A stretch of DNA of 63,984 bases, the filler included, from Sluysia triapertura (lineage: Eukaryota), in assembly GCA_046118255.1 (NCBI GenBank). It is 4 parts of 4 records of this genome, joined end to end, with 100 filler letters (N's around TTAATTAATTAA, not from the genome) between each part and the next. Parts side by side here need not be neighbours in the genome. Positions count along the whole stretch, not along the records: positions 1 to 21,512 come from JBJNIA010253968.1; 3 more parts are not named here. The stretch is one strand, 5' to 3'. Both the position numbers and the translations under genes were made by a program. The notes under the pieces are model-generated. The model was not told the origin of the DNA and ran no database searches. It worked only from the letters and a program-made list of their open reading frames with translations. Each line of letters opens with the position of its first letter. Position 1 is the first letter of the stretch. Positions 136 to 21,512 of the stretch are shown in pieces.

Positions 136-1015
136 AAAAAAATTGAAATAAAAAGTGTAAATACATTGATATATCAATGACAAAAAGGTGTACAGGTATT
201 GAAAACTCAGGAACATCAATAAAATACTCATTTTTTAACAATACTTCTAATCATTAATTAGGATTTGCACTTAAAAACATTTGTATGAAGTCTTAACAAA
301 TTCTTTCCGAATTCCAAAAAATCAAGTAATAAAACGATACACTTTTTCATCAAAATAACAATGTATTTTTCATCTGATAACTATTAAAATCTTCATACAT
401 TAGTGCGGATATGTCCTTGGACCATTCTTATTTAACAGTATAGGTTATAAAATTTGAAATTCGTTTTTGTAGCTTATGACAGAACTGTTTATATCCGAAT
501 TTATCGAAATAATTTTATCAAATAACGTATCACATTTTGTGTTGTTTATTCTCGCTTTACAAAAATTTATTACGAGAAGTAATAAATGATAACATTGTTT
601 AACATTTCCATGTTGATTTCTTACTGTATTAAAGTTACACTTTTTAAACTATTCATTTTAATTATGCATGGAATTTTAATATTAATTTTCTATTCTTGAA
701 TAGGAATTGTTTTGTATTTTTTGATACATTGTTTTAAAAGTATATGAAAGTAATGTGTTGTGGATTACATTTTGTATTTTAGGTAGAAAATGCAAGAATA
801 CAATTGGTGTCCAGTTGTATCTACTTTCATACACTTTGTATATTTCGTATATTTTCACACACTTACTACAAATGCTGAATTATTAATATTTTTTGAAATC
901 AATAATTTCAATTCCACTAATTTATTTATTTTATAATTTTTGAAAATTTATCACAAGTCTCATTTAAATATTAAATAAAAATACAATTATATTATGATAT
1001 CAATTTTCAACTAAC

Positions 1016-1249
1016 TTGACCTTCACAAACATCATAAAACCGTTGTAGTAGTTGTATAATCGACGATTTACCACAACCACTTGCGCCAACCAATGCGACT
1101 GTTTGACCCGGTTCAATAACCAAATCAAAATCATTCAATATCACAGAGTCAGGTCGAGATGGATAGGAAAATTTGACATTTTTCATTTCGATTGTCCCTT
1201 GCACTTGGCTCCTAATTCCTCCTTCATTCATTTTATCAATTTCAGGGAT
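1016..1249 (-). CDS. ABCB1: ABCB1/P-glycoprotein exon: start of NBD1 with Walker A
   Basis: IPEID...IEMKNVKFSYPSRPD...ALVGASGCGKSSIIQLLQRFYD; AG acceptor at 1250-1251, GT donor at 1014-1015. The gene presumably continues past the window start. Confidence 0.95.
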
Positions 1250-1337
1250 CTATGTAAACATTAATTATAGTTTCGTAATTATTAATAAGCAAATAATTAA
1301 TAATAATCAATAATCATAATCATAATAGATAACTAAC

Positions 1338-1451
1338 TCTTTCAGTTATTTCAAAGATCGTCGCAGCTGCATACCTAGACTTCATAATATTACCTAATAA
1401 TGGAACAGCTTGTCCAAATCCCATTGAACCCATTAAACAACTAAAAAATAC
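1338..1451 (-). CDS. ABCB1: ABCB1 exon (TM6)
   Basis: VFFSCLMGSMGFGQAVPLLGNIMKSRYAAATIFEITER; GT-AG boundaries, in frame with neighbours. Confidence 0.92.
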
Positions 1452-1950
1452 CTAAAAATATAAATTATGTATGAATTATGAATTTTAGTAATGTATAAAA
1501 ACAGAGCAATGTGATTTATTAATATATTGATTTTATAATGTAGTTACATTTTTTGTCGAAAAAAGCACTTATCACCAATACTGAAAAGCTATCAATATTT
1601 GTTTTTAAATGTGTATAACCGTTTATATTGCCATAAAAATCAATAAAATCAATAGCAGTGATCTGAAACATAAGTTGCACAAATTTAAAACTAAATTTAG
1701 TAAAAGAATAATAGCTATTTTTTCTCTATTTACTTACAAAATAATTTCCAAGCAACATATATGGTAGAAGTAATAAATTGTGAAATTTTTAGACAAAATT
1801 GTTATTTTTACTTCGACTTGTGTGGAGTCAAGAAAAGAATATACGCTTATAAGGGTATTCATTGTTATAAAAATTAATTGTGTTACGTCATGAAATAATG
1901 TGTACTAAGTTACAAAACTCGGATTAAAATAATAGCAAAAACACACTTAC

Positions 1951-2122
1951 AATTAACATTTTACCTGTTGTTAAACCTTCTTCTCTAATTAGTTTACTTC
2001 CGTACCAAAATCCGAGCGCATATGATAAAAAAAGAATACCTTGAAATATACCCATCATCAATCCCATTATGCTGCCTTTTTTAACTCCAGCTAGTGCAGC
2101 TTCATTTAAATTATTACCATAC
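1951..2122 (-). CDS. ABCB1: ABCB1 exon (TM5)
   Basis: YGNNLNEAALAGVKKG...LSYALGFWYGSKLIREEGLTTGKMLI; gtaagt donor. Confidence 0.93.
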
Positions 2123-3133
2123 CTATGATGAAATTTAATATCTTTTAATATATTAAAAATTTAATAAATTTTTGGAGGAAAATTATTTTCCCAATACCTA
2201 CTTAAAATAATTAATAATATATTAGTTTTTTATTGGGTCAGAAATTACGAATAAAATAAATTTTATTTCTAGCTCCATCTATTTTCATATGTGGTTTTCA
2301 GTTCTATGACTAGATTATCTTCTTATGGTTATTATATCTAACAATAAATAATAAATAATTCAATAATTCGTAATATACAATGTGTAATATAATATTCATT
2401 AATCTTTAAATCTTTGTTGAATAAAATTTCTTGTGAATTTATTGCTTTATTAATTAATTGTTAAGTAGAAAGAGAGAATCCCAAAAGAAGATAAAACAAA
2501 ATAGAATAAAATAAAATAAAGTGAGACAAAATAATATTTGTTCATATAACGATCAAAGTCAAAGTCGAGTATCGTCGCAAATAAAATAAAAAACTTACTT
2601 GCGTTTCCATTCCCAGTCATCGGAACGAGTATCCAAACTCAGACTTCTAGATTGAATAAGCGAACATTAATTGAATATTAAAACAATAACAAGTTTAGGT
2701 TGTTGCTGACTAACAATAATTTATATAAGTGAAGATATTTAGAGTATTATTGAGGACAAAAGTGTGTATTTACTAAAGTTGAGAATCTATTATAGAATCT
2801 ATTATAGATATTGAGGAATAGTAACTTGTTACAGAATTTGTATTGAAAGTCTAATTGTTTAATTTATTACAAATGCATATTAATTTATTGACACAAAAAG
2901 TATCCAGAGCCATTTGGAGTTTTGTAAAGAATAATAATTAAATATAAATAATTTTTATTAAGCTTGAATTTCTTAAATTCAACAAATGCATTTATTCTCA
3001 CAACAAATGGACGGATTGTACATTTTAGATAATGAAAGTAAATTTAATAGAAATGTAAAAACAGAAATGACATTTTCAAAAACAAAGACTGATTACAAAA
3101 ACACACACTCCAAAAAATAAATTCTACTAAAAC

Positions 3134-3258
3134 CTTTCTGCTTCATATTGTTCACCTCGGAAAGCAACTACAGTTCGAATAGATCCTAACACTTCTTCTG
3201 CTATCGCTCCTGCTTTTCCATATGACTGTAATTCAAATTGGTTCAATTTAGCCATCAT
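3134..3258 (-). CDS. ABCB1: ABCB1 exon (intracellular loop 2)
   Basis: MMAKLNQFELQSYGKAGAIAEEVLGSIRTVVAFRGEQYEAER, the ABCB AEEVLxxIRTVxAF motif. Confidence 0.95.
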
Positions 3259-3540
3259 CTACAAATATTTAACTATTTAATTAATTACTTATCATAAGAT
3301 CAAATTTATACATTAAAATTATAAATTTACATTAAGTATTTATGAATAATAATAAGCCTTTAATCAAACACAAATGTTTAATTAATACAAATCAATGCCG
3401 AGATAGTGTTTTTAAAAAAGATAATATACATTGTTTTTTAAGGACAAGTGATGCAAAGGCAAAAAACCTTAAAGCCACATTAAATAAAATTAAAATTACT
3501 TTAATGTAAGTAAATTTATAATTATCTTAATAAAAATAAT

Positions 3541-3595
<55 letters not shown>

Positions 3596-4319
3596 GACAA
3601 AACGAAATATTGTCAAAAACGATTATACTTAGTACTTTATATTGATTTTACAAAATCTAATCAACGTTTAGCTAAGTTCCATAAAATCTGATTTGAAAAT
3701 CATTTCAAATTCATTCTGCTTTTATTTATTGATCATTTGTTTATTATTTTATTTTTTGATTATTTATTTTTAGTAGTCATAAGAAACGAAAATATCTGAG
3801 GAATAAATATTCAAAATTCTGCAAATGAATTAAAATTGGCAATAGAAATATGTTAGAATGAATTCTATGCCTAAATGTTTGTTTCTCAGATGTTGTAAAG
3901 AACTAAATATATCGATATAATGGATTTGTGAATGCCAATTTGATTATTGCATTTTGCGATATTTCTTAATTTTATCATTCCATAACTTTATAAAACTTGA
4001 AGTTAATATGGTTGTTCAACCTATCTATTTAAAATATTTGTTTATCATATTAAACAATAAACATTTACACATTCCCGCAAATACTTATACAATCTATGCT
4101 GCACATCAAAATAAACTTTAATATGTAATATTTTATAAATAAAAAAATTTATAACAATAAAATTTCTATATTAACTACCATAAATCTCCTTAACCTTCCA
4201 CCTTAATTTTTTTCATTTCCCTTATAATTCTTACAATAGTCTTAACTTTTTTCTATTCCCTGCTCTCTTTTATAACGAGTTTTATTTACTACAAGTACTA
4301 CTATAAGTACTACAAGCTC

Positions 4320-5900
4320 AATTACCGCATCTGGCATTAATTCACGATGAAGACGAATAAATATTCTAAATAACGACTCAAACAAAACTTTAATAGAAAA
4401 TGTTTACAAATCAGAACCAGAAGAAATAAGAAAATACTTCTCACAACTTCAAACTCATTGTAGTTGTTTATCTTATAATGTTAAAACATCATGCGATTTA
4501 CTGATGAATTTGTTACTTACCTACTAACGATCGCTTAATGATATAGAAATTCTGAAATTGGAGAAACAGCAAAGCGAGTTTGTGATAAATGTTCAGTGGT
4601 TTTAGAAGAAGTAGACTACCAAAGATGCTTAATAAAAAAATGAAGAGTCAACTACTAAAAAGAACGATGTTAATATAGCGAAAGATGACTTAATAACGAA
4701 ATCAAAATCAAAAGATGATATTGTAGAAAATCTTCGTAACTCTGATCTTAAACAAGTGATATGTTTAAGATCAAGATATAAAACTCAAATTCAACATATA
4801 AAACTGGAATTGTCTTTACAGAATCATTGTGAAAAAGTGATCATTTTACTAAAAATTGCAAGAACAACGAAGAAGTCGAAAAAGACTCCATTTAATATAA
4901 CCAAAACTTAAGTACAATAAACGATCTTGATAAACGCCTAGGTCTTGAAGATGGTATTCGATAATTTGAAACTATAGCTGAAAGTGTAAAATTTACTTTT
5001 CCTAAGTACAAAAGTCTGTAAGTGATATAGTGCTTGTGTTTGTAAAAAGCCTCGAGTCCAACAACCTACTATAATAGATAAAAGTTCTTAATTTGCGTTA
5101 ATTTAAAGCTTATTTGTGTTGTAAGATTTTTATAAAATTATGTTTTTTGTTTTAATAATTGTGCTTTAAAGCACTAATAAAATTTAAAATTTTTAAAAAT
5201 CTGAAATATTGATTAATTAATCTATTGCAAAGTAAATCATATTATGGACGCAGATAATTTCCATGCCATATCACTTTTAGAACCGGTTGTTGTAACCAGA
5301 AATTCAGTTAATTTTGTGATTTAGACCTTTATTTGCATGATGATGAATATTGTAGAAACGTTCTGTGTTCTGCAGATATTAGTTTCGCAGTTACGATCAA
5401 GCTTGTAAATAGGTTGAGTGTGGACGATAAGTGCAGTGTGGACGATAAGTGCAGTGTGGACGATAAGTGCAGTGTGGACGATAAGTGCGGTGTGGACGAT
5501 AAGTGCAGTGTGGACGATAAGTGTTATTAACTAAAAAGGTTCTAAAAAAAGGTCTCGGCAAAGAGACGAGACAAACATATGTCGATGATTTAGCTGTTGA
5601 ATATGCATGTTATGATACTTCAGATAAACTAAACGAAAAAAACGAAGCTTTGCTGCTCAAAATAAAGACTGAAACTGCTATTTCTGAAAATTATGAATCA
5701 ATTAATAAAGTAAAAACGACGAATATCATTAAAGTGTTATTACAAGTACCACAAGGTCTTATATTATGTTTTTTGGTCCCTTAGTTACATTTTTTGAAAA
5801 GCACTTTTATTTTAAAGATTACGTACTGTAAGACCAATTAAATGAGGATCAAGATCACGGTGTCTATTACAGTCACATCTTTCATTCATGATCCTAATAA
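4320..5900 (+). mobile_element. Degenerate LTR-retrotransposon (gypsy-like) gag-pol remnant in ABCB1 intron
   Basis: Broken coding-like tract. ORF 5521-5784 contains QTYVDDLAV (RT YxDD motif). Boundaries approximate. Confidence 0.4.
5417..5524 (+). repeat. 18-bp minisatellite x6 (AGTGTGGACGATAAGTGC)
   Basis: Six near-identical head-to-tail copies read directly. Confidence 0.95.
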
Positions 5901-6855
5901 TAGTGTTATTCATGTGTTTTTTATGCTTTTGATTGAATCTAAATGTAAGCAGTGGAAATGAAAATTTGACAAACTTGTGTAATATCAAATGCAACCATGT
6001 GTTCATTTGTTATTTAATTTTAATTTGTTGTTTAATTTTAAATTTTAATATAAACAGTGAACACATCAATTTAAATGTATTCTTATTTTTATTAATTACA
6101 ACATGTATTAATAAACACCCTCCAAAATAATTAATTTCGTTAGTTTCAATATCATTAATATTACAAAAATCTAATTGTATTACGTGAAATTGAGCATTAA
6201 ATTCAAATTATAACTTAATACATTCCTTCGTAACATGCTTCTAAATCTTTTTAACTATTTATTATTTACATATATAATAAACTTCTTGGTCATCAAAAGA
6301 CTTGACTTTGAACAAAACAAAATAATTCAAAAGTGAATATATCATTTAATGATTTGATAATACCATTCATATCAAATTGTATACAGATTATTTCAATTAA
6401 TTTAGTGGTTATTAGATACATAGCACTACAATAATTTATAAAAAAGTGAAAAATAAAACAATAAAATTAATAATAATGAAAACAATAACAAAATTATTTA
6501 ATATTAATGTTTAAAATCGATTAAAATAGTTAAGCTTGAATGAGAAGTAAAAGTTATTTAAGGTATGAAAGTAAAGTAAATAAATGTGAAGATAAAATGA
6601 TGAGTGATTGGATATGAAGTAACATATTATTGTAAATGTATTATTATTTTTGAAATGATGAATTATGTGTTTTATATGTATTGTATGTATTTCATCAACA
6701 ATCGCCTACTTAATTGTGGTAGACAGTAACTATGGTAACTGGAAACAATATGTACTATATACACATACTTGGTTAGTTTTCTAAAACAATGTTTAACCAT
6801 AATGAATGTTTTGCAATAATTTAATTTGTTACTCAACGATTTTTTATTGTTATAA

Positions 6856-6921
<66 letters not shown>

Positions 6922-7006
6922 GCAACTACTCTAAATAAATGTCTTAGTGAAAATTGATTTATTTTTGAAAAATTAATTTAGTAGAAGGTAATTTGTCATC
7001 ACTAAC

Positions 7007-7178
7007 CTTTGTCATCACTGCAGTTACTATCATTATTAAAGGTGAAGCTGCTAGAATTACTAACGATAATTTCCAATTCTTCAGAAATGCTATAATCAAA
7101 CCACATGTACCTACAACGATCCACTGTACCATTTGTCCCATTTTACTACCGATTCCTACTTCAATTGTGTTGATATCA
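7007..7178 (-). CDS. ABCB1: ABCB1 exon (TM3-TM4)
   Basis: DINTIEVGIGSKMGQMVQW...KNWKLSLVILAASPLIMIVTAVMTK; GT-AG boundaries. Confidence 0.94.
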
Positions 7179-8757
7179 CTTAAGTTAAAGTTAAGTTAAT
7201 AACAATAATTATTATGATAATAAAAAGTTTATCACATGTAACTTTAGAATAGCCATTTTTTTAAAACATTATCGAATACAATCTTTCATTTTATAATTTA
7301 CCTTATTTATGAATAATCAGTTATCGCGTGTATTTGATTAAATAACTCAAGATAATATACCCTTATAAGCCTAAATATGAAGTTTTTTATTTTAATTTTA
7401 TTGAAAATTAATTACTTATCCCAGTATTGTAAAGGTCATTATTTGCAACATTTTCGGACCATTTTATATTCACGAATTCTACAATGAACGGTAGATGTCA
7501 ATAGTAACTCTTTTCTGCAAACATAATTTATTACAAAATTAATTATATATTGAAATATATTTTCTGCGTTATTACACCTACTTGAACAGAAAAGGGTCCT
7601 TAGTCAAAACGAAATAGTAATTATAAGATATTAAATATTCGGGAATTATGACCGATTTGATAGAACAATATGCTAAAGCTGAATGAATTTCGAATGAATT
7701 GAAATTAAGCCGAGTGGATTTTATCGAGAATGGATGTAGCTTGAAAACCTTTGATAGTCTTTTGATGAAGGATTTATGAAAACTTAAATTTAAATGTTAT
7801 TTTGCGGTAACATCTAAATAGAAAATCAATTTTATAATTTGTATTGAAATCACATTTTAAGCAATATTTGTTTAATAAATTATGACAAAATATTTTATAA
7901 AAATCAATCTGGTTTACGAGAACGACTAAAGTTTATTTCAATCTGAATACCAATTAATTGAACTTGGTGAGAATTTATTTAAATTCCTATAACGAAATTT
8001 TGATCCATCTTTGACTAATAACGTCGTTTCAAAATTTAATTTAATAATTAAATGTAAAATTGCGCAAAATTTTATCTTGTAGTTCAAAATTGGAATGATC
8101 TATTCGTAAAATGTAAATAATACGATAAATAATAATAAATAATAATCAATAATAAATATGATTATATGCGTACGACTTAAGGCACGATCATACTATCTTT
8201 TTATTTTCTAAGTCATTAATATAGGATTTATCTTGATGTAAGACTGTTGTAACTAATTAATGATCAATTTTCGACTAACTAGATATAGATGAGTGAAACT
8301 TGCGCTAAAAACTGAACCTTCACAACAATTTACATCACAACATTCTATTCATTTTGTTTTGTTCTTTGCACTTTGGAATAACATCAAATTTCTTTCTATT
8401 AATAGAGTGTGATACTAATTTTATTACATAGTAACATTTTTGATTTGAGTTAATGAACCTCTGACAGTGCGCTGAATCTTTGACAGGACCTTTACAAGCC
8501 AAAAAATATACTGTAATATGTTATCACTATACTCAATGAATTATTCTCATGAATTTCTAAATCATTATTATTATTATTATTAAATATTTCCGATGAAATC
8601 CGAATTGGTAGCAGCTGTAAAACAAAGTCATTTCTTAGTGATTGAATTGAAATAATGGAATTGCCACGTTGGTGATAATGTAATGATGCACTTTTAATTA
8701 AATGATAGTGTAATGATAAAAATTTTTACGATTATACATTTCAAATAAGATTTATTA

Positions 8758-8809
<52 letters not shown>

Positions 8810-9117
8810 CATTAACACTTTTACATTAGTAAGGTTATCCCACATATCTTATCTTAAAGAATTACATTGCATTAATTAAAAATTATACGATGAATATATT
8901 TTAAAATTGAATGATTTTGGGATGTAATAGATTTGATATAAACTGATATTTGACATGTATCGAAAGATCTGAAGAATGTAAGGTGTGATAAGTTGTAAGA
9001 ATTGTAATATTTTGATGAATGCTTTTATCGTAAGTGTTTGGAAATACTGTACAACAGATCCTTAGTATTTTAAAATTTATATATTTGTGACTCTTTTCGA
9101 CAGATTAATAAACTTAC

Positions 9118-9289
9118 TCAACCAATTTGTTATTAAGAGCACCGCTTCTCTGTGAATCAAACCAACCAATATTCTGTCTTAAAATAGCTTTGAATAAGTT
9201 CATGCGCATTTTGGCAACTTGACGACGAGATGTAATACCAAGAAAAGACTCGGATATGTATGATGTAACAAACATACCAAGAGCAACAA
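9118..9289 (-). CDS. ABCB1: ABCB1 exon (TM2/intracellular loop 1)
   Basis: RRQVAKMRMNLFKAILRQNIGWFDSQRSGALNNKLV, matching ABCB ILRQxIGWFD; gtaagt donor. Confidence 0.94.
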
Positions 9290-10424
9290 CTTAATTATAT
9301 TTATTGATTTAAAACATAATTTACAATATAATATAATATACAATGTAAAGTCACAGTATGATTTTAAATTAATGTGAAACAATTATTGAAAAAGAAAATT
9401 AATTTTTTGTAATTTTTTCTTCCTCTACAAAAATAAATGTAAAGATATTAAGTAAAGTTGCTGAGTTCACTTTCGAAAGTTTGTGCGAATTTTGTTAATT
9501 ATCTTTATCACCGATTTTTAGATTTCTGATATTGTAATTTTTCTTTTCTTTTATTCTCATTGAAAATTGATTACAAACACTTTCTAAAATTCAAAGAACT
9601 GCAACATACCCTTACTCTAGATTGTATGTGATCTGTGCTTGACAAAGTGTCACTATAAATGGAGCAAAAACAATTAAAAACTGAAAATTCTTAAATTTTA
9701 ACCAGTAAGTAATGTTCTATTGTAATTTTACTTTTAATAATGATATATCCATTTATTATAATCATAGGTTGATTTAAAACTATTTTGAAACAAAAGCCGA
9801 AAATAATTATTGGACAATGCATTTATTAAAAAAAATCAGTAATCAAAAATAAACACAGTTTTCAACTAAACTGTCACATTTCCGACGAAAATACGAAATG
9901 TTACGAATTTTACCACGATTATTTATGTTTTTTAAAGGTAAGAAAAGTTTCAAAAGGTAGAAATAGTATTAAATATCCTACATAAGCAGAAAATCCTATA
10001 AATAATTATGGGAAGAATAAAACCAGTAAGAAGTAGCTACAGTTGTGAGAAACATTTGAAATTTAATATTTTAATTGGTGAAATTTGGTAGCAAAAGTTA
10101 TATTTCAAAGTGTTTATCTCTAATTTAGGGAAATTTTTAAAACTCATTTTAAATTTTAATTAGTTAAAACAAATTGAAGGTTAAATTAGTTAAATCACCT
10201 TATAACTAAATTTTATGCAAATTTTTCATAATTTTGTGGCAAACAAAAGATTCTTATTAACAAATACAATGGAGTTATGGAATATTTTAATGAAATATTC
10301 AAAATTTAAAGTGATTTATATATTTCTTTTGCCAAAAATTACTTTAAATTTGACATTTTTTCTTAATGTTAAAACTTAAATCGCCAATGTTGCACAAATG
10401 AAATGTTACGCGACTATCGCTTAA

Positions 10425-10996
10425 CCGCTGGAGTTGCATTAATTCAATCTATAACATGTTTGTTAACAACGTATCTGTATTGATGGTCTTACGAGTTTTA
10501 TCTTGTCAATTGAAACAGCTATTTTCTTATGCACACTCTGTTTCTTTGTACACATTTATGTATGAGTTTACATAGGCGATATATTTTTCCGTTGAATTTT
10601 TCCTAATTAATTAAAAAATAGTTATAAAATATTTAAAAATAATGTGGATGTGCCATGATGAAGAAATCTATGCACATGATTTATCTTGCAATGAAGAACA
10701 GCGTGATTTAGAAAATTCTGAAGACGAAGATTTTAGTGACATTCCCGAAGATAGTAATGATGCTGAAATTATACCCATCACAAAACAACGTAAAACTGAT
10801 CAACCTTTCGATACATCTACTGACTCAGAATCGGACATAAATGATGTTGAAAACGATTGGTCTCAAAATGACAATGAACCATGTCTTAAACAATTTTTGG
10901 GAAATACCGGAGTTAGTTCAAATTTTGAATTAAAAAATGCAAATAAATGCCGGTGGTTTATATATATCTGCGATTAAAATAATAGGCTGTCAAACT
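10425..10996 (+). mobile_element. Internally deleted piggyBac element (PGBD4-like acidic N-terminus)
   Basis: ORF 10642-10977 is acidic and ends WSQNDNEPCLKQFLGNTGV, like piggyBac N-termini. TTAA flanks both sides; TIRs are weak. Confidence 0.55.
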
Positions 10997-12894
10997 GTTA
11001 ACTTTTACTTAGGTCAGAAAAGTTTAATTTATTTAAGTTTTATGACAAAATATAGAGAATTGTGTTACATTATACATTGGATTCGTTTTTTCAGGTTCTG
11101 GAATTAATGATGTACGAATAAACTATTGGTTTTCCGAATACCTTCAGGGAAATTTATTCAGATGCCAGACAAGTGACTAAAACAAATATACAAATACTTT
11201 GTTTACGTATTACTAAACGTCATAATAAAGAAAAATGAATATAACTTATAAAATTTAAGTTTTAAAATAAATTATAGGACAGAAAAAGTAAGACGAACTA
11301 GCAAACCATCTGGCAACTTCTTCCATTTTTTTCATTATGTTGTATTGATCAGGCAATTGAAATCCTGGATTAGTAGTTCTAAATAAATACATTATTATTA
11401 AGCTTTATCTTAGATTTTTATATAATTGTACTAAGTAGAATATTTTGCTTATAAATAATGTAATATTATTAAAAAATAATACCATATTATCATGTTTTGC
11501 TCTGATTTGGACATTATAAATGTTTATTATTTAAAATTATTTTGAATATCGCTGGAAATATATAATGACTAACAATATACTCGATTAAGATTGTAGTTTA
11601 ACATATTAAAGATTAAACAAAAAATTAATTCAGTTAACAATACGAATTTTGAATTAATTAGAGCTTTCACTTTAACTTATGAACAGAATGAGAATGAAAT
11701 TGTAATTGTACTAAATCTAGAAAAATTAATGAATGAATCTTAACGAAAATCAGAAAATAAATGTAACTATTATTTATTGAAATTCACTCTACTAATAATT
11801 AATCTAATAATATGATCACTAAATTCATTAAATATATAATATAATATACAAAAATATAATATAATATGATAAAGTTCTATTCGGGACAATATTTTGGAAC
11901 TTCGTTTTGACATAGAAATTGAATTAGTTGTTTAGTTTAACATATTTATATAAAAACAGTGAAAAATCGAACATATGAAATAATTTCCAAGTAATCTTGA
12001 ATATTAAATTTAAAATTTATTACCGAGTAAATATAAACTTAATTAATGTAAATTTTTTGCAAAAAATATTGTAACAATGTCAAAAATTTGAATAATTAAA
12101 TAATAATTTGATTTACATAACTAAAAAATATTACTTTACAGAATAAAGCCTTTAAATACATTTTGTCCAAATTAAAAATAAGTGATGCTATAAAACTATA
12201 CCTAGAACGGAAGTTAGTGCATTTAGTTTCTTCTAGAATACCATTAACTCAACATATTCCAAATTCTATGAAAATTTGGAGATACCTAACGTAGATGACT
12301 ATTTCATATACCTATTAATTAAAAAAGTAAATGTAAATATTACAAAACATTGCTGAATTTCGAAACCTAAGAAATTCGTTTTCATTTATATGTATTAATA
12401 GCAAAGTTTAATATTTTTAAAATGACGTTCGAAAGCTTCTATTTTAATTAAATAATTACTAAATAATATCCCTATTGCTCGATTTACGCGGTAGATATGT
12501 TCCAAAGAAAACCAACAAAAAATACGCATTATTTATTTTATACATTGTTTTTTTCAACTTCTTTAAAAAATTAGAACTTCTTATTATGTCAAAACACAAA
12601 CATACGAAATAATACAAAATATAAAAACATTAATTACGACGATATTTGTTATTTTAAATTGTGATGTTTGACCTATTATTTACTTTTCCATTAAAAATGT
12701 TTGAAAACCCAGTGGAATGTTTATGTTAGTACGGCACAAATTGTAGGAGACGTAATTATATTATTGAATTTTATTATTAAAATTACAAGATTAATATTAA
12801 CAGATACATGTCAGTAAGTAACCAATAATAAAATTATCGGTAAAATTGTACATAAAAATTTGTATGTAAGAATATAAATCAAAATAATTATTAC

Positions 12895-13103
12895 TGAATT
12901 TGTTTTATCATTTCATTTAAAGACATGGTTGGTAAAAGACTGTAATTTTTGATTAAATCTTTGTAATAATTCTCAAATCCAGTTAAACTATCAGTACTTT
13001 CTCCAAATACTAAAAATAATGCAGGCCATGCAATTCCTGTACCAACTGCTGCAAGTATTGCAAATAATATCATAACTTTGTCACAAGATGTACTTAAAGA
13101 AAA
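12895..13103 (-). CDS. ABCB1: ABCB1 exon (TM1)
   Basis: FSLSTSCDKVMILFAILAAVGTGIAWPALFLVFGESTDSL, the ABCB N-terminal DKxxM...GxxxP...VFG pattern. Confidence 0.92.
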
Positions 13104-13137
13104 CTAAAAATATTAATTATACAAATAAAACTGTAAC

Positions 13138-13262
13138 TAAGCTCCCAATACCAACTGGTACTATTTTCTCTTCTTTATCACTTATTTTATTTTTTCTATT
13201 TTTAATTTCATAATCACTTATTTTACCATTTTCTAAATTGTTATTAGAAACACATTCATCAC
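13138..13262 (-). CDS. ABCB1: ABCB1 N-terminal exon (start-codon exon not identified)
   Basis: DECVSNNLENGK...KEEKIVPVGIGSL, joined in frame to the TM1 exon by a 34-nt GT-AG intron (13104-13137). Confidence 0.75.
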
Positions 13263-14196
13263 CTTAAGAAAAAAAGCTGTGAATAAATATTCATATTACA
13301 TTCATATGTTGGATTATCTTGACAATATGATCTATGAATATCACCTTATTTGGATTAAATATTCAAAAAATAAAACTACTTTTATTTTCAGGAGGTACTT
13401 GATTCGAACTCATAGCAATATCTATTACTTAATTATTATTATAAGTAATAGTATATTAAATATTAAATAATAATTAATAATATTAAATATTAGTATAAAA
13501 TATTAGGATGAATAATAATTTATTAAATTAATATTTTGAAGGTAAAATTATTTATCATTATTGATGATTTTAAATGAAAATAATTAATTTCATTATAAAT
13601 ATGATTTACTAATATTAAAATTTTTGCAAAAATCGTATCACGATAAGTTTCAAAAGAAAGAGGGTATAGAATTCATTATAGTAACATAAACAAACAATTT
13701 ATTTTATGTTTAACGCCTAACTTTTTTATTATAATTCAAAATCTTCTAAAGCATTTATGATATGTATATTTCTTGAGAATGTTTACAATATATTTTCCGT
13801 GGAAAATTTATTTAAAATTCATTTTATATCTACTGTGTCTAAATGAAATTTTACATAGATAAAATGAATGCAGTTCGTCTTTAACTATAACAAACACTGA
13901 ATTAATTAATAAAGAACCTGCATTTTATGCTCTTCATTTAAACTTATCTTACTTAGTTACTGTTGGAGTCGTCAGAAGATAATGTGATAAAGATAAAGAT
14001 AAAATTAATAGTATCACAGCTTGAAGGTAAAGGGATCAACATTTTCTAAAGTTTTACAAAAAATTTATGAGTACATTAATTAATTAATTTGATTAAAATT
14101 GTTTGAAAATCATTTTTGATCAAAAATTTTCCATGTGATATTTGTGCAAGAGAGTGTATCAGATAAAATAAAATACAATTATAAAAATTATGAATG

Positions 14197-15070
14197 TGCT
14201 GTGGTTTTTATTAAAATTTATGCCGAAACCTACGGCAAAATAGAAAATCGAGCAGGGTTCGGTTGCAGTAAGCGTCTTACGTCGCAAAGAAGGCACCTCT
14301 GCAAGAAATAAGTTAAAGGAAATACAATAAATTAAATTTATGCTTCTACAACTAGAGGTTCTAATAAATTCACGAACAACTAACAAAACTATTTATTAAT
14401 GAATTAAAATTTTATACAATTTAAGTTATAATACAAAATAAAGGTAACAGAATAGAAAGAAAAGTAAAATTTATTATTAAAACTTTTAAAAGTCTTTAAT
14501 AATTAATAATTATTAGATTAGAGTGGACTTTACTCCTCAATATATCGGGCAATCTTAGAAATAAATTAAACTAAAGATAATCTTAAGTGGATTTTATGAT
14601 ATTTGCTTTCTTAGATAAAACAAATATCAATCTTAATAAAAACAAATTACTTGTTGCATGGAATAAAAACAGTCCGAGCAGAACATTCCTGATGTGTCTT
14701 GATAGTTTGAATCCACGTAGAAAGAATAATGAATTATATCCGTTTGATAGAAACTGTCTCTGTCGCAAAGATTTAAAAAATGCTGTTGATAATACTGCAA
14801 CTTATTTTACAAAATGGCGATTTTCATGGTATTGATGCTAGTTTATATACTAGTCATTATCCAATGAAAATCAACGGAATGTTCTAGAACATTCTAGAAG
14901 CTTCTATGCTATTTATAGAAGCTAGTTTAATTTTTGGAAAATAAATGTTCTTTAATTAATGTTAATTGATTTAATTAATTTTTTATGATTTTTTCGTGAT
15001 TTTAAATAATCTTAAGGAGCTATTATTTCGTCTTAGAATTATTTTGTAGGGTTGTGATGGTAACCTAACA
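14197..15070 (-). mobile_element. Solo-LTR-like element, copy A (HSE-CCAAT-TATA promoter)
   Basis: Minus strand begins TGTTAGGTTACCATC and ends AATAAAAACCACAGCA; homologous to copies B, C and D. Confidence 0.7.
14842..14905 (-). promoter_or_regulatory. Six-unit heat-shock element plus CCAAT and TATA boxes, oriented toward ABCB1
   Basis: 14876-14905 reads gGAAt gTTCt aGAAc aTTCt aGAAg cTTCt; CCAAT at 14861; TATATAAA on the minus strand at 14842-14849. Confidence 0.75.
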
Positions 15071-15143
15071 GTTCCATAGATATTTTAACTTTGTAATTCA
15101 AATAATAATATGAATAACGATATTAAATGATTCGTTATGATCT

Positions 15144-16019
15144 TGTTAAGTTGCCATCGCAACCCACGAAAATTGTGTAAAATATCATTATAAACATTTT
15201 AAAAATGTTTTAAAGCTTCGAAATAACTAAAAAATATTGATTTGTCAAAAAAAGAAATTTATTTTCCAAAAAAATAAAATTTCGAAAAGAAAATAAGCTT
15301 CTAAAAACAGAATAGAAGCTTCTAGAATGTTCTAAAACATTCCATCGATTTCAATTGGCTGTTGACTAGTATATAAAATAGCACCAGTTCAATTTACAAC
15401 ACAATTTTTAAGTATATTTTTTAAGTATATTTTTACAATTCATTATTCAATACGCTGTTTAACCGACGCCATCTTAGTTTTTTGATTTATAATTAATTTA
15501 ATCAAATCTACTCAGCCATCGAGGATATTAATTTGGTTTTCGGTATGATTTATTATTATAGGAGAATTTCAATCTCTACGATTGGAATCGTAAAATATAC
15601 GTAATAACATTTTTATAAATCCCGATCTAATGAGAGTAATTTTTTAACTTAAACTATTATAATAAATCAAATATCATTTCGTTTTTGATTGTAAAATCAT
15701 TTATTCTATCTATTTTATCATTTTATTCTGTTTTTACCCGTTTTACATTAATTTATTAATATATTTATATTCTTTTGAATCTTTATTTAATAAACGAATT
15801 TAATACATCGAGTTTTTGTAAATCGGTTAGAATGATAATATAAATAAAATCCTCTAGTTTAGTCAGCAAACTTCATTTTAAGTTGTTATACAAATTCTTA
15901 TATTAAGATTAACTTAGTGTTAATTGCAGAAACGCCATCTTTACGACATAAGATGTTTACTGTAACCTGATCCTGCTCAATTTTTTGCAGTATGTTAAGA
16001 GTTAAGAAAAACCACAGCA
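15144..16019 (+). mobile_element. Solo-LTR-like element, copy B (head-to-head with A)
   Basis: TGTTAAGTTGCCATC...AAAACCACAGCA; HSE 15314-15343 (one core mismatch), ATTGG 15354, TATATAAA 15370. Confidence 0.7.
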
Positions 16020-16935
16020 GTTTTTTGAACAAGACTAATTCTTAAGATATACCTCTCAAATAAAAGTCAATTTACGCGAATGTTTATAGTTCATGCTAAT
16101 ATAGACATGCATTATATTTAATATTTTAAAGGTTTCTTAAAGTTCTGTAATGTCGAATCTATGATTATTATCATTATTCTCAAAATTCACAGAGAGAGAA
16201 TATATTAAATATAAATGTAAGATTAATGTGTTGGAGTCTGCTCTATTAATTTGAATTAGGAATGGCAATCTAAGAACCCCTAAGAATAAACACTTTTGCA
16301 TTTGTTGTGATGGTTTATATTCTATAATTTATGGTATTCTAATTCAATATTTTTAATGATAAAAGATTTCACAGATTTTAATCTTGGTCATTTTTGTAAT
16401 GCCAATATAAATGTTGTGAGTTCAACTCTACAATCTAACACAAAATACAAATGATGAACCCTACAATCAAAAGGCAACAGTCAAAACATATTGTGATGGT
16501 TCAATTATTAACCACGAATATATTATATCACCTACACAATAACTTCACCTAAACACATTGTAAAGTATAACACATATAGTATTATGCAATATCACGTCAA
16601 TCCCTAAACTCCTTTATCAATTATTAACTTTCGAAATAGTAAAGTTATAAGATTTTTTAAATAATTTTAAACTATTTCTATCATCTAATAACATGATTAA
16701 ATTGTAATTTTGATAAAACTTTATAACCTACAATTGTCATTATTATTAACTTTATCACCAGTGACGCTGGTAATCCGACTAAAGCCCAAAGGTTATCGAG
16801 ACCCTACGTTAAAATTCTTGTCTTCATTAAAGAGTCTTATTTTTTATTGTATGTAGAATTAAAATGGTCTTTCAAAAGACTTGCCACTTTGCTTATCAAT
16901 AATTTAAAAGGAATAAGCTTAAAAAATTATCATAC

Positions 16936-17694
16936 TTTTAGGTTATCATCATGACCCTTTAAAATCGCATAAAATGCTTTAAAGTGATTTATAAATGTCT
17001 AAAAACACTTTTAAAATAATTATTTTCCAAAAAGAAAATAACATTTCGAAAAAAGAAAATTCGCTTCTAAAAATAGAGTAGAATCTTCGAGAATATTCTA
17101 GAACATTCCATCGATTAGTATCTAAACTAGCATCAGTTTAATGAAAATCGCCATTTTACAAATATAATTTGGCAATAGTCAGCATCATTTTTAAAGTGCA
17201 ATTAGTAATCAGCTCCATTTTGAATTTAGTCATTATTTTAGCATACTGTTAGATCGGCTTCTAACAGATCTAATTCATAACAAAAAACATCACAATAAGA
17301 TCTTATTTTCCAAGGTGATTTTTTTATTTTGTTTTAAGGTTATTTTCATTTTTCATAAGTCAAAATCATAAACTATACTTAAAATCAAATTTAATTCTAA
17401 TATTGTAAGAACCCCGATATATTGAAGGGAGACTTTCCAAGTAAATTTTAAAAGAAAATAGATTAAATATTCCAAGAGGATTTTAATCTTAAAATAATAT
17501 TCAAAGTTTTGTTTTTTGTTATTTCCATTGTATAAAATCATTAAGTTAGGAATGTACTAAACATATTTTTTAAGTGAAAATAGTTAACTTATCAAGTTGC
17601 AGAAACACGAACTACAAGCCGTAAGACGTTTTCTGTAACCGGACCCTGCTCATTTTTATTTTGCCATAGGTATAGCTTTAAGAAAACCACATCA
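16936..17694 (+). mobile_element. Solo-LTR-like element, copy C
   Basis: TTTTAGGTTATCATC...AAAACCACATCA; perfect six-unit HSE at 17080-17109; 3' block shared with A and B. Confidence 0.68.
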
Positions 17695-20166
17695 CTGCCT
17701 ACGATCCTAAACTTTCGAATCACGGCTAATTCGTAGGATTTTTACAAATATGATATGAAGGAGGTCGAACACGATTGGAAATTGTTCTGAGTCTAATGTT
17801 GCTTTTCGTTAGCTTAAGAATTGAATAAAAATCTTAAGGTTTATCTAAGGTCGATGAGATACGAGTATGAGTTAATTAAATTAATGATCTTCTTATATTA
17901 GTACCGTTCTGAGGCGATATTAATTGAACTTAGACCGTATGGTATAATATGATTTGCTTTCCGCTTAATAGCCATATTAGTTTAAAATATCTGAATTTAC
18001 TTAGGTTCTATTTAAAAAGAACCTAATCTTGGGATTGCCCAACTGTGGATCTGGAGATGAGTGAAAACATATAAAACCATAAAATAAGGAAAAAACTGAT
18101 ACAAGTAATGGATTGAACATTAAAAACATTGTTGAAATAAGAATCATGAAAGAGGACACATTTATAATAATCTCAACAGCAAAGAAAGCCTTAATATTTA
18201 GCAAAGCCAAATTTTAATTAATTTTTAATCATGAAATGTTGAATTTTTAATACTTAGTGATGCAAATATGATGGATAGAAGATGAGGTGATTGCTATGGA
18301 AGAGGAGAATCTGTAAGTGAGTTCGAAATGTTTGTAAAATAGTTCGTTTGAGAATAAGAACCTTAAAACATTTTTCATTAGAAAATTGGATGTGAAAAAT
18401 AAAAAATTAATTAAAAAATAGTGTAAATTAAAATAAAATTCATTATTTTTATGTATGTTAACAGTATTGCTGATTGTTATTTTAATGCGAAAAGTGATTT
18501 AAGTAAAAATATATTGAGTAGAGTAAAAGAAAATGATGTTTGATAATAAATCAGATTTCTATGTTTTTGCCTAATAAAGTTTGACAGGCCATACCATGTA
18601 GTTGTCAAAGTTGTTATTGTCGGTCTGATTCTCAAAGAGGTGAGGATGATTTGTGTGAGAGAGTGTTTGGTTGTGAGATTATGAATTGATTGGATGATTA
18701 GAAAGTATAAAATAAAGATTTCAAAATTTTTACAACACAATAATACAATAACACAACAACAACGATGTCAACAATGATGATAGAAGATCCATGCATAGGG
18801 TAAAATTTGTAAGTTTGGTTTATTTATTTATTATTTCATTAAAATAACATAAATAACTAATTTTATTTTAATTTGGATAATTTTAATATTATATTATTTT
18901 CAGTTAATTTTTGAGATGTTTTTAAGTTAAGTTGATAGGAACTCCCTGCACAATTTATTTTTAAAGTAATTTGAATTATCCATTTGATTTTCAGCTAATT
19001 GTAAGATAATTTAGTGGGAGACATTCTACCCAATTTATTTTTTTTAATATTTTTAATCACCATTATTAGTTTAAACTTTCTAGATATTCATATTTTTAGT
19101 GGTTGTTGCGTCACTCCTGGTTGTTTTGTTTAAATTAGATTGTAGTGTTTTGACTTTATTATAAACATTATTGTTATTGTTGTCATTTTAGTGATTCTTA
19201 GCATTTAGTAAAGATTTTCATTGACAATAAATTGTATTACGAATTTTTGTTTAATAGTACATTATTGACTTAGTTTTGATCTTGATTGTCAAGAACTTAA
19301 ATTTGGAGATGATAGTTATTAATATTATAAAAAAGATTATTGCAAAAATATATTTGATATACTGACTATTTAAATTATTAAGGTTCCTTTAAGCTAACCA
19401 AGTTAATATTGAGTCATAATAGCCAGTAATTTTAAATACGCAACAATTGTGTGAACGTATACTATTATTATAATACAACTGCCATGTTCGGAATATTAAG
19501 CTCAAATATAATTGATAAAGTTTATAAGAACAAATGAGCAAAACGTTCTCGAATATGAGAATGTGATTAAAATACCAAATTTGATAAAATTTAATAAAAG
19601 AAATAGAACCTTGATTGTAATTAACAATCACCCGAAATATTTTATAATGTAACACCGAAGCATTTATTATATTTATTCAGTAAATAAAGGTGCTGACTGC
19701 AGAAAGAAGTTATGCTCTAAAATACCATCAAACACTAAATCTTAAGTTTTGTTATAAATCATTATCTCTATTCTGTGTTTAGAATTTTATAAGACAATTT
19801 AATTATTTTCATATTATCTATAATAAAACTACGATGCCTGAGAATAGAATATTGCAAGTGGGAAGTAACCACGAATTTTTATTAAGATTAAGAACTATTG
19901 GTATTTTTAGATGCTGAATTTGTTCAAGTGAAACACAAGAAACTAGGATAAGCCAGTATAGTGATAATAAATTACGAAGGACAAGAAGTGTTTGTCACTA
20001 AAACTACACCCCGAAATTATGTGACAGATTACAATACTAAAATTACTAATTTTACTGAAACAGATTTGATTAATCAAATAGATGAACGACTTCCTCTGAA
20101 TCATCTAAATCTATGTTCGGACTGCGAGAAAAATCCTTATAATTAGGTTTTATGTATTGTATTTAT

Positions 20167-20402
20167 TGCAATGGTTTTCTTAAATCTAAACCTGTGGAAA
20201 AATAGAAATTTGAGTAGGGCCCGGCTATAGCAAACTTTCTTATATCGTGTAGAATGTTTTAGTACATTCTAGAAATTTCTTTTCTATTTTTAGTAAGGAA
20301 TTTTCTTTTTTAGAAAATAAGATTTCTTTTTAAGAAATAGGCTTAAATTAATATCTTCAGATGTTTTTGTTGTTTTACTTAATTTTTAATAACAACCTAG
20401 CA
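20167..20402 (-). mobile_element. Internally deleted copy D of the same LTR-like family
   Basis: Both termini retained (minus strand TGCTAGGTT...AAAACCATTGCA), eroded HSE near 20250-20280, possible TTAT 4-bp TSD. Confidence 0.6.
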
Positions 20403-21512
20403 TTATTAATGATAATCAAATATTAATCGATTAATCACATGTGTTAAATACTTTGATTTTTTAGATATTACATGTAAATATATAGTCTCTAATTATTATC
20501 TTGATATTTTGAGGAAATGGCTTGGAAAGATCTTTCTAAAACAAACGCATACACTATCACCATATTACCGTAGCTTTCCGCATTGAAACGGTATTTTTCC
20601 TATATTAAGTTACTATTTTATTTTTAGATTTCATGCTACTTTATATTTAAATTTAAATATCAAAAATATTGTTATTCTAATATATTAATTATTAACATTG
20701 ATCATTAACATATTATATTAATATTGTAAATAAAATAATTTATGTCAATTTATGTAAATAGCTGAAAATATTTTAATATTTATGTCAATTTTTATAAATA
20801 GTTAAAAATATTTTAATTTAAAGTAAAATAATTTATGTAAATATTCAAAAAACATTGTAAATATTTTAATTATAAAAATCTTTATGTAAAAAAACAATAA
20901 AAATAATCTATTGTAAATATTTTAATTACATCAATTATAATCAATTATTATTTTATTATAAATCAAATAAACATTTAAAGCATTATTACATAAACGGATA
21001 TTTACGAATTATAAATCCTTATTCAACGGATATTTATTTGATATTTACGAATTTTATATATCATTAATCCTTATTCAACGGATATTTATTTTAAAAATTT
21101 TATGTTTATTGAAACAATTAGACCAGACATTTAAAATATTATCAGAGAGTATATAAAGGTATGGATATTTTAAGAACAACACAATGTTTTTTAGAAAGCT
21201 TACGAATTGAATTTTTAGAAGTTATAACGATATTCCTTGGAAATAATAACAATTAATAGACGTTTCAATTTGGCACAGAGTTACTTAACGATTATTTGGA
21301 CAACACGATTTCTGATTGATTTTTTGAAATATTTGGACGTTTCTACAATTTGATTTTTTCCAATTTGGTCATACCATAGTTAACACGAAGTTTGACGATT
21401 TTTTGGTTTCTCAATTTGGTTGTACAATTCGATTCCCACAATTTCGGATATTTTCGATTTGGTCAAAAGATTACGTAAGCTCTTAATTATAAGTTATTAG
21501 ACCCGATTAGTC

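What the first reader, a model, noticed from the sequence alone, without database searches (positions are those of the whole stretch)
14197..20402. Cluster of LTR-like elements carrying heat-shock promoters directly upstream of P-glycoprotein
Seen: four related elements with TG...CA-type ends (A 14197-15070 minus, B 15144-16019, C 16936-17694, D 20167-20402) lie within ~7 kb of the ABCB1 5' end; I found no other copy in the window. A and C each have six perfect alternating nGAAn units, and A and B continue with CCAAT and TATATAAA, an hsp70-like layout. The A and C arrays differ at three positions, all non-core, while the flanks are visibly diverged, which suggests selection on HSF binding. Copy A points toward ABCB1, ~0.9 kb from its first identified exon. 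Known: HSF trimers bind nGAAn arrays; TE-borne HSEs (Caenorhabditis Helitrons, plant ONSEN LTRs) can rewire stress responses; mammalian MDR1 responds to HSF1. Inference: a TE-derived heat/stress enhancer or promoter for a xenobiotic efflux pump.
Basis: partly seen in the sequence, partly recalled or inferred. Interest (0 to 1): 0.85.

Follow-up and report, generated by a model that had tools for sequence, protein, structure and literature searches.

The report
Heat-shock-promoter solo LTRs near ABCB gene
The four elements upstream of the P-glycoprotein-like gene are real, but they are ordinary decayed solo LTRs of a retrotransposon family with thousands of copies; its own promoter is heat-shock-like, and nothing shows that this gene has recruited them.

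Summary
Four related ~875-bp TG...CA elements lie upstream of a full-length ABCB (P-gp-like) gene. A and C carry six perfect nGAAn units; B has 5 of 6 and D a remnant. A and B also have an inverted CCAAT box and TATATAAA.

The elements belong to a very abundant family: about 4,300-4,800 first-look candidates in a 619-Mb genome, copies 70-92% identical. Ten of 27 full-length copies have perfect 4-bp target-site duplications against 0 of 27 in a shifted control, so they are solo LTRs. The HSE-CCAAT-TATA module is a family-wide feature. The genome holds 1,587 perfect six-unit arrays, against 0 for a reversed-pattern control.

Across 52 copies, HSE cores carry fewer lineage-shared differences than expected (observed/expected 0.44) and fewer than the spacers. 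Private substitutions, my proxy for change after insertion, hit cores at the background rate (0.95, CI 0.58-1.46). I read this as selection on the element's own promoter while it was active, then neutral decay.

Intact arrays are common: 14 of 29 A-like copies keep six or more units. The upstream region is a mosaic of repeats. No RNA run was found for this stretch, so heat induction and LTR-initiated ABCB transcripts are untested. HSE-bearing TEs are already known (ONSEN, Macrostomum LTR-RTs, Caenorhabditis Helitrons).

The parts
14197..15070 (-). Copy A: full-length solo LTR of the A-like subfamily, no intact TSD. Its promoter points toward the ABCB gene.
   Evidence: 77-85% identical to the full-length copies fetched, up to 92% to partial matches
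14877..14904 (-). Copy A HSE array: six perfect alternating nGAAn units
   Evidence: 0 mismatches; 0 matches in 100 shuffles
14842..14865 (-). Copy A core promoter: inverted CCAAT (ATTGG, 14861-14865) and TATATAAA (14842-14849) on the minus strand
   Evidence: read directly; this is the best-conserved 31-column stretch of the A-like alignment
15144..16019 (+). Copy B: full-length solo LTR of the older B-like subfamily. HSE at 15315-15342 with 5 of 6 units intact, ATTGG at 15354-15358, TATATAAA at 15370-15377. It points away from ABCB.
16936..17694 (+). Copy C: solo LTR of the C-like subfamily, with a ~100-bp deletion near position 600 and loss of CCAAT and TATA. Six perfect HSE units at 17081-17108.
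20167..20402 (-). Copy D: internally deleted solo LTR (5' ~195 nt joined to the last ~65 nt). Degenerate HSE at 20252-20279. Perfect 4-bp TSD TTAT at 20163-20166 and 20403-20406.
1007..13413 (-). 5' part of a full-length ABCB (P-gp/BSEP-type) transporter gene. Putative ATG at 13413. TMD1 exons include 12891-13073, 9114-9275, 6959-7141 and 1924-2067; NBD1 Walker-A exon at 1007-1231. The gene runs off the left edge of the window.
   Evidence: ABC_membrane, ABC_tran; E 1e-38 to 3e-44 against ABCB1, ABCB4, ABCB11 and Pgp-1
13990..14196 (.). Unrelated abundant ~200-bp repeat that abuts the 3' end of copy A
   Evidence: 1,503 first-look candidates, 80-86% identity
18179..19447 (.). Unrelated, very abundant ~1.27-kb repeat between C and D
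   Evidence: 13,117 first-look candidates, 80-90% identity

Best explanation
A, B, C and D are four independently inserted, old solo LTRs of one abundant LTR-retrotransposon family, from at least three subfamilies. They sit in a repeat-rich intergenic region upstream of a full-length ABCB transporter gene. The family's U3 region carries an hsp70-like promoter: 6-8 contiguous nGAAn units about 10 bp upstream of an inverted CCAAT box and about 26 bp upstream of a TATA box. The likely mechanism, which is inferred, is that HSF trimers bind this array under heat or proteotoxic stress and drive transcription of the element. Lineages that kept or extended the array were the ones that went on amplifying. 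After insertion and LTR-LTR recombination the copies decay neutrally. Intact arrays in A and C are what a sample of this family looks like, not a signature of recruitment by ABCB.
For: Abundance: 4,262, 4,346 and 4,761 first-look candidates for queries B, A and C. The genome has 1,587 perfect six-unit arrays against 0 for the reversed pattern, and most of those listed carry the family's spacer letters.

LTR nature: TG...CA ends. Ten of 27 full-length copies have a perfect 4-bp TSD against 0 of 27 in a shifted control, and D has the TSD TTAT.

Family-wide module: alignments. The CCAAT-TATA stretch is the best-conserved part of the LTR, and the HSE window ranks 67th of 804.

Selection pattern: non-majority differences in HSE cores are 36 observed against 82.5 expected (P 7e-9). 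Cores have fewer than spacers (Fisher P 0.003). Private substitutions in cores are 20 observed against 21.1 expected.

Array size varies by 10-bp unit gain (8 units in 5 copies) and by loss. Fourteen of 29 A-like copies and 4 of 18 B-like copies keep six or more units.

An HSF DNA-binding domain is encoded in the genome. The flanking sequence is a mosaic of other repeats. Precedents for HSE-driven TEs are in PMC12801592 and PMC6927752.
Against: No full-length element (LTR pair with gag-pol, PBS and PPT) was found among 58 loci. The superfamily is therefore unassigned and 'solo LTR' rests on the termini and TSDs.

Heat inducibility and HSF binding are inferred from sequence only. A, B and C lack intact TSDs.

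The singleton test has limited power. It excludes a reduction below about 0.58 for the average copy, and it says nothing about individual copies such as A.

Four copies in 6.2 kb is far denser than the genome average of about one per 130-145 kb, so some regional or target preference exists and is unexplained.
Confidence: 0.8

Rival explanations
1. Exaptation. Copy A acts as a heat- or stress-inducible alternative promoter or enhancer for the ABCB pump, possibly helped by the arrays in B and C, and is maintained by host selection. A has an intact array, CCAAT and TATA, and is oriented toward the gene.
For: A has six perfect units plus an intact CCAAT and TATA, and points at the gene. Its TATA is about 1.43 kb from the putative ATG. 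Three arrays with four or more contiguous units lie within 3.7 kb upstream of the putative ATG. Helitron-borne HSEs confer heat induction on some nearby genes in Caenorhabditis (PMC6927752).
Against: Intact arrays are common in the family (14 of 29 A-like copies), so A's state needs no selection. Post-insertion decay in HSE cores is at the background rate across the family. B and C point away from the gene, and C has lost its core promoter. An LTR-initiated transcript would carry about 1.4 kb of AT-rich leader unless it were spliced. [quoted passage not shown] No RNA data could be found to test this.
Confidence: 0.1
2. The ~875-bp unit is not an LTR of a gag-pol retrotransposon. It would instead be a self-contained non-autonomous mobile unit, or an element that captured a host hsp70 promoter, mobilised in trans.
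For: None of about 35 sampled 5' or 3' ends abuts a shared PPT- or PBS-like internal sequence. The only shared 3' continuation, seen in four copies, has just 16 genomic candidates.
Against: TG...CA ends with 4-bp TSDs are the integrase signature. A high ratio of solo to intact copies is normal for old families. An RT_RNaseH_2 pol fragment lies 1.1 kb upstream of an LTR fragment in the same orientation in L028, though this is weak evidence.
Confidence: 0.07
3. The TTCTAGAA-type array is not an HSF site in this organism. It would bind another factor, or be a structural palindrome conserved for reverse transcription or integration.
For: No binding data exist for this organism.
Against: The array matches the canonical HSE definition six to eight times over. 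It sits at the classical position upstream of CCAAT and TATA. Conservation falls on the GAA/TTC triplets rather than on the spacers. HSF is encoded in the genome.
Confidence: 0.03

Closest known systems
HSE-containing Ty3/Mdg4 LTR retrotransposons of the flatworm Macrostomum lignano (PMC12801592)
   Same: Animal LTR retrotransposons with canonical HSEs upstream of the TATA box and TSS inside the LTR. In that study heat induction exceeded 250-fold, and HSE mutation abolished the heat response.
   Different: Those families have 4-20 copies and 1-4 HSE motifs. This family has thousands of mostly solo, old copies with 6-8 contiguous units plus a CCAAT box. Its superfamily is unassigned and its induction is untested.
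ONSEN (ATCOPIA78) of Arabidopsis and other Brassicaceae
   Same: An LTR-borne HSE bound by heat-shock factor drives the element's own transcription. New insertions can make neighbouring genes heat-responsive. This is from my own knowledge and as cited in PMC12801592.
   Different: ONSEN is a plant Ty1/Copia element, low in copy number and recently active. The family here is in an animal-like genome, high in copy number and old, with 4-bp TSDs.
Helitron-borne HSEs in Caenorhabditis (PMC6927752)
   Same: A TE family spreads many HSEs through the genome and so could rewire the heat-shock regulon.
   Different: Helitrons are rolling-circle DNA transposons, not LTR elements. HSF-1 dependence was shown experimentally there and has not been shown here.
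Canonical hsp70 promoters (HSE, CCAAT, TATA)
   Same: Same order and spacing of motifs: a multi-unit HSE within about 60 bp upstream of TATA, with an inverted CCAAT box between them.
   Different: Here the module sits inside a mobile LTR. Sequence homology to the host's own hsp70 promoters was not tested.

Membership tests
LTR retrotransposon (solo LTR) | 5'-TG...CA-3' termini on a discrete unit | tested here: met
   The ends TGTTAGG... and ...CCACAGCA recur in about 27 full-length copies.
LTR retrotransposon (solo LTR) | Short target-site duplication flanking the unit | tested here: met
   A perfect 4-bp TSD occurs in 10 of 27 copies, against 0 of 27 in a shifted control. Copy D has TTAT on both sides. 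A, B and C have none intact.
LTR retrotransposon (solo LTR) | Paired LTRs flanking gag-pol, with a PBS and PPT, in at least some copies | tested here: inconclusive
   No such copy was found among 58 loci. A shared 3' continuation in four copies is a low-copy neighbouring repeat. One RT_RNaseH_2 fragment lies near an LTR fragment in L028.
Canonical heat shock element | At least three contiguous inverted nGAAn units | tested here: met
   A and C have six perfect units. B has four contiguous units (5 of 6 positions intact) and D has three. Relatives have up to eight.
Canonical heat shock element | HSF binding and heat-induced transcription | not testable with these tools
   No RNA run was found for this stretch. 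An HSF DNA-binding domain is encoded in the genome.
hsp70-like promoter layout | HSE proximal to a CCAAT box and a TATA box in the same orientation | tested here: met
   Met in A and B and in most family copies. Not met in C or D, which have lost CCAAT and TATA.
Exapted TE-derived stress enhancer or promoter of a host gene | Constraint on the motif after insertion, beyond the rest of the copy | tested here: not met
   Family-wide, private substitutions in HSE cores are 20 observed against 21.1 expected (ratio 0.95, CI 0.58-1.46). This could not be tested for copy A alone, because no orthologous loci are available.
Exapted TE-derived stress enhancer or promoter of a host gene | TE-initiated or TE-dependent stress-induced transcript of the host gene | not testable with these tools
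   No RNA data.
ABCB full transporter (P-glycoprotein type) | TMD (ABC_membrane) followed by an NBD (ABC_tran), with best matches to full-length ABCB proteins | tested here: met
   Pfam hits exon by exon. The NBD1 exon matches residues ~386-452 of ABCB1, and also ABCB11, ABCB4 and Pgp-1, at E 1e-38 to 3e-44. One-to-one orthology to ABCB1 was not tested.

The most novel reading that the evidence does not exclude
The family has scattered more than 1,500 perfect six-unit HSF arrays across this genome. Some copies, including A 1.4 kb upstream of the ABCB start, would then work as heat-inducible promoters or enhancers, so that the xenobiotic efflux pump and many other genes are wired into the heat-shock regulon by an LTR family. 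That scale is well beyond the HSE-bearing LTR families of Macrostomum, the only other animal case I read, which have 4-20 copies each.
Probability: 0.12. Interest if true: 0.6.

Novelty: new member of a known kind. Interest (0 to 1): 0.3.

Why it matters
The ABCB-specific claim does not stand on present evidence, so the locus itself is ordinary: a stack of TEs upstream of a gene. What may be worth following is the family. It is a high-copy animal LTR whose promoter is a textbook 6-8-unit HSE with CCAAT and TATA. Lineage-level conservation falls on the GAA/TTC triplets, and there is evidence of unit gain. It would add an independent, much larger case to the few known HSE-driven retrotransposons (ONSEN, Macrostomum). 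It would also give a natural experiment on how thousands of strong HSF sites affect a heat-shock regulon and HSF titration. All of this depends on expression and binding data that are not available for this organism.

Tried and rejected
- RNA evidence: no RNA run holds the stretch. The single run is DNA contigs, probably the source sample. It served only to check the A-B and B-C junctions. Its summed depths peak at the HSE-promoter bins, but they are not copy numbers.
- Internal region of the element: four copies (L004, L007, L017, L025) share more than 1 kb beyond the LTR's 3' end. That sequence has only 16 genomic candidates and no ORF of 60 aa or more. I rejected it as the general internal region.
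- Inversion by recombination between A and B, as an explanation for their missing TSDs: the flanking tetranucleotides (AATG/GTTC and ATCT/GTTT) do not show the expected exchange. Rejected.
- A inserted into the repeat at 13990-14196: the 73-bp A/B spacer is unique in the genome, so the repeat does not continue on the other side. Not supported.
C-like copies, long contigs that might hold full-length elements (C33265, C133066), and host hsp70 promoters could not be fetched. The comparison with hsp70 promoters was therefore not done.
Conservation was measured by per-column frequencies and pairwise identity only.
- The organism was not identified; run and organism names are coded.
Full report
**Setting.** The piece is contig C253968 of a 619-Mb, highly fragmented genome (263,945 contigs) with about 25% G+C. 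On the minus strand lies the 5' part of a full-length ABCB transporter. Its exon-sized ORFs hit ABC_membrane in the correct order, followed by ABC_tran. The Walker-A exon at 1007-1231 matches residues ~386-452 of ABCB1, and also ABCB11, ABCB4 and C. elegans Pgp-1, at E 1e-38 to 3e-44. The N-terminal coding pieces lie at 13413 downwards; the putative ATG at 13413 was read by eye. 'P-glycoprotein-like ABCB' is justified. 'ABCB1' as an ortholog is not tested.

**Observation.**
- A (14197-15070, minus), B (15144-16019, plus), C (16936-17694, plus) and D (20167-20402, minus) are homologous.
- They are about 79-81% identical pairwise over aligned columns and only 63-70% over the full length.
- D is an internally deleted copy with a perfect TTAT target-site duplication.
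- The six-unit pattern is perfect in A and C. B has one mismatch and D has two. None of 100 shuffles of the window gave a match.
- The A and C arrays differ at three positions, all in spacers.
- A and B continue with ATTGG (inverted CCAAT) and TATATAAA. C has lost both.
- A's promoter points at the ABCB gene.
- A Logan contig at single-copy depth bridges the head-to-head A/B junction, and another bridges B to C.

So the description is accurate.

**What the elements are.** Each of A, B and C, used as a query against the whole genome, gives about 4,300-4,800 first-look candidates. The scored matches are 70-92% identical. A, B and C each retrieve a different set of closest relatives, so they represent three subfamilies. 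Among 27 copies with both ends, 10 have a perfect 4-bp target-site duplication next to the TG...CA termini. A shifted control gives 0 of 27. That is the signature of integrase-mediated insertion of a discrete unit, which means solo LTRs.

None of the sampled ends abuts a shared PBS- or PPT-like internal sequence. A >1-kb continuation shared by four copies is a low-copy neighbouring repeat with 16 candidates. The only hint of a coding partner is an RT_RNaseH_2 fragment 1.1 kb upstream of an LTR fragment in L028. The superfamily therefore stays unassigned. By my own knowledge of these families, a 4-bp TSD is typical of many Ty3/mdg4 elements.

**The heat-shock module belongs to the family.** Alignments of 20 B-like and 30 A-like copies show the same block in nearly all of them: HSE array, about 10 bp, ATTGG, about 12 bp, TATATAAA. 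In the A-like subfamily the CCAAT-TATA stretch is the best-conserved 31-column window of the whole LTR. The HSE window ranks 67th of 804. Array length varies in 10-bp steps. Five A-like copies have eight perfect units, nine have six, and the others have lost units by deletion or substitution. Genome-wide there are 1,587 perfect six-unit arrays, against 0 for the pattern read backwards. Most of the listed arrays carry the family's characteristic spacers. The genome encodes an HSF DNA-binding domain.

**Is there selection on HSF binding, and at what level?** I did not build a consensus sequence. I scored each alignment column by its majority frequency and stratified by A/T versus G/C, because G/C columns decay about twice as fast here.

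| Measure, A-like and B-like sets pooled | Observed | Expected from the rest of the LTR | Ratio |
|---|---|---|---|
| Non-majority cells in the 18 HSE core columns | 36 | 82.5 | 0.44 (CI 0.31-0.60, P 7e-9) |
| Private (singleton) substitutions in the same columns | 20 | 21.1 | 0.95 (CI 0.58-1.46) |

- Cores have fewer non-majority cells than the interleaved spacers: 4.6% against 8.75%, Fisher P 0.003.
- Singletons are my proxy for mutations after insertion. They do not differ between cores and spacers (P 0.62).
- The excess conservation therefore lies in differences shared between lineages. I read that as purifying selection on the promoter of the replicating element, followed by neutral decay of inserted copies.
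- A and C belong to different subfamilies, so their 'cores identical, spacers different' pattern is this lineage-level signal.
- Intact arrays are unremarkable: 14 of 29 A-like and 4 of 18 B-like copies keep six or more units.

**Context of the cluster.** The ABCB upstream region is a mosaic of repeats. A ~200-bp repeat with 1,503 candidates abuts A. A ~1.27-kb repeat with 13,117 candidates lies between C and D. Part of the B-C interval is moderately repeated. Four copies in 6.2 kb far exceed the genome average of about one per 130-145 kb. Co-location is a habit of the family, though. Five of 58 loci fetched elsewhere (L007, L016, L018, L023, L043) hold additional independent copies within about 1.5 kb. 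This suggests a regional or target preference, not something specific to ABCB.

**Mechanism.**
- Shown: the motifs, their order, their family-wide conservation, the TSDs and the copy numbers.
- Inferred: HSF trimers bind the array under stress and drive transcription from about 30 bp downstream of the TATA box, giving the element a burst of expression. This has been demonstrated for ONSEN and for Macrostomum LTR-RTs (PMC12801592), and for Helitron HSEs in Caenorhabditis (PMC6927752).
- Open: whether A still fires and reaches ABCB. That would require a 1.4-kb AT-rich leader or splicing, and no RNA run holding this stretch could be found.

**Verdict.** The elements are LTRs with heat-shock promoters, and HSF-site selection is real but acts at the level of the element. 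Recruitment by the ABCB gene is unsupported, and its decisive test cannot be run with these tools. The kind is known, so this is a new and unusually abundant member. Interest is modest.

Noticed in passing
L007, L016, L018, L023, L043 (e.g. L043:652-1500 abutting L043:1501-2321); window 14197-17694: Copies of the HSE-LTR family tend to lie next to one another. Five of 58 loci fetched elsewhere hold extra independent copies within about 1.5 kb, sometimes directly abutting or inverted. That is several times what a density of about one per 130-145 kb predicts. It may reflect a target preference, for example for the open chromatin of resident copies, or TE-rich islands.
   Followed up: partly
A-like copies L045, L047, L048, L049, L052, L056, L062, L064 (alignment): A 10-bp insertion relative to copy A (a duplicated two-unit block, TAGAACATTC or a close variant) lengthens the HSE array at this point. 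Five of these copies (L047, L048, L049, L052, L064) have eight perfect contiguous units. Downstream of the TATA box, a 'GCCATTTG(T/C)AATA' motif is tandemly repeated one to four times in different copies.
   Followed up: partly
window 18179-19447: A ~1.27-kb interspersed repeat with about 13,000 first-look candidates in the genome (80-90% identity). It is about three times more abundant than the LTR family and was not classified.
   Followed up: no
window 13990-14196: A ~200-bp repeat with about 1,500 first-look candidates ends at or within a few bases of the 3' boundary of LTR A. It does not resume on the far side of A.
   Followed up: partly
L044:98-787 (minus strand): An open frame with a strong Thioredoxin_12 hit (E 1.6e-34) lies about 700 bp from an A-like LTR. 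By my recollection this domain belongs to UGGT-type ER quality-control glucosyltransferases, which I did not check here. A single case, with no inference drawn.
   Followed up: no
L069:793-1404; L028:94-423: Fragments of other retroelements lie beside family copies: an RVT_1 reverse transcriptase that looks non-LTR-like by motif in L069, and an LTR-type RT/RNase H junction in L028. The L028 fragment has the same orientation as an LTR fragment 1.1 kb downstream.
   Followed up: partly
window 5333-5561: A tandem repeat of 18-21 nt gives repetitive ORFs on both strands (SVDDKC and TYRPHC repeats) inside an ABCB intron.
   Followed up: no
window 10642-10977 (plus strand): A 111-aa acidic ORF lies inside an ABCB intron on the opposite strand, possibly a TE-derived or nested gene fragment. 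Not examined.
   Followed up: no
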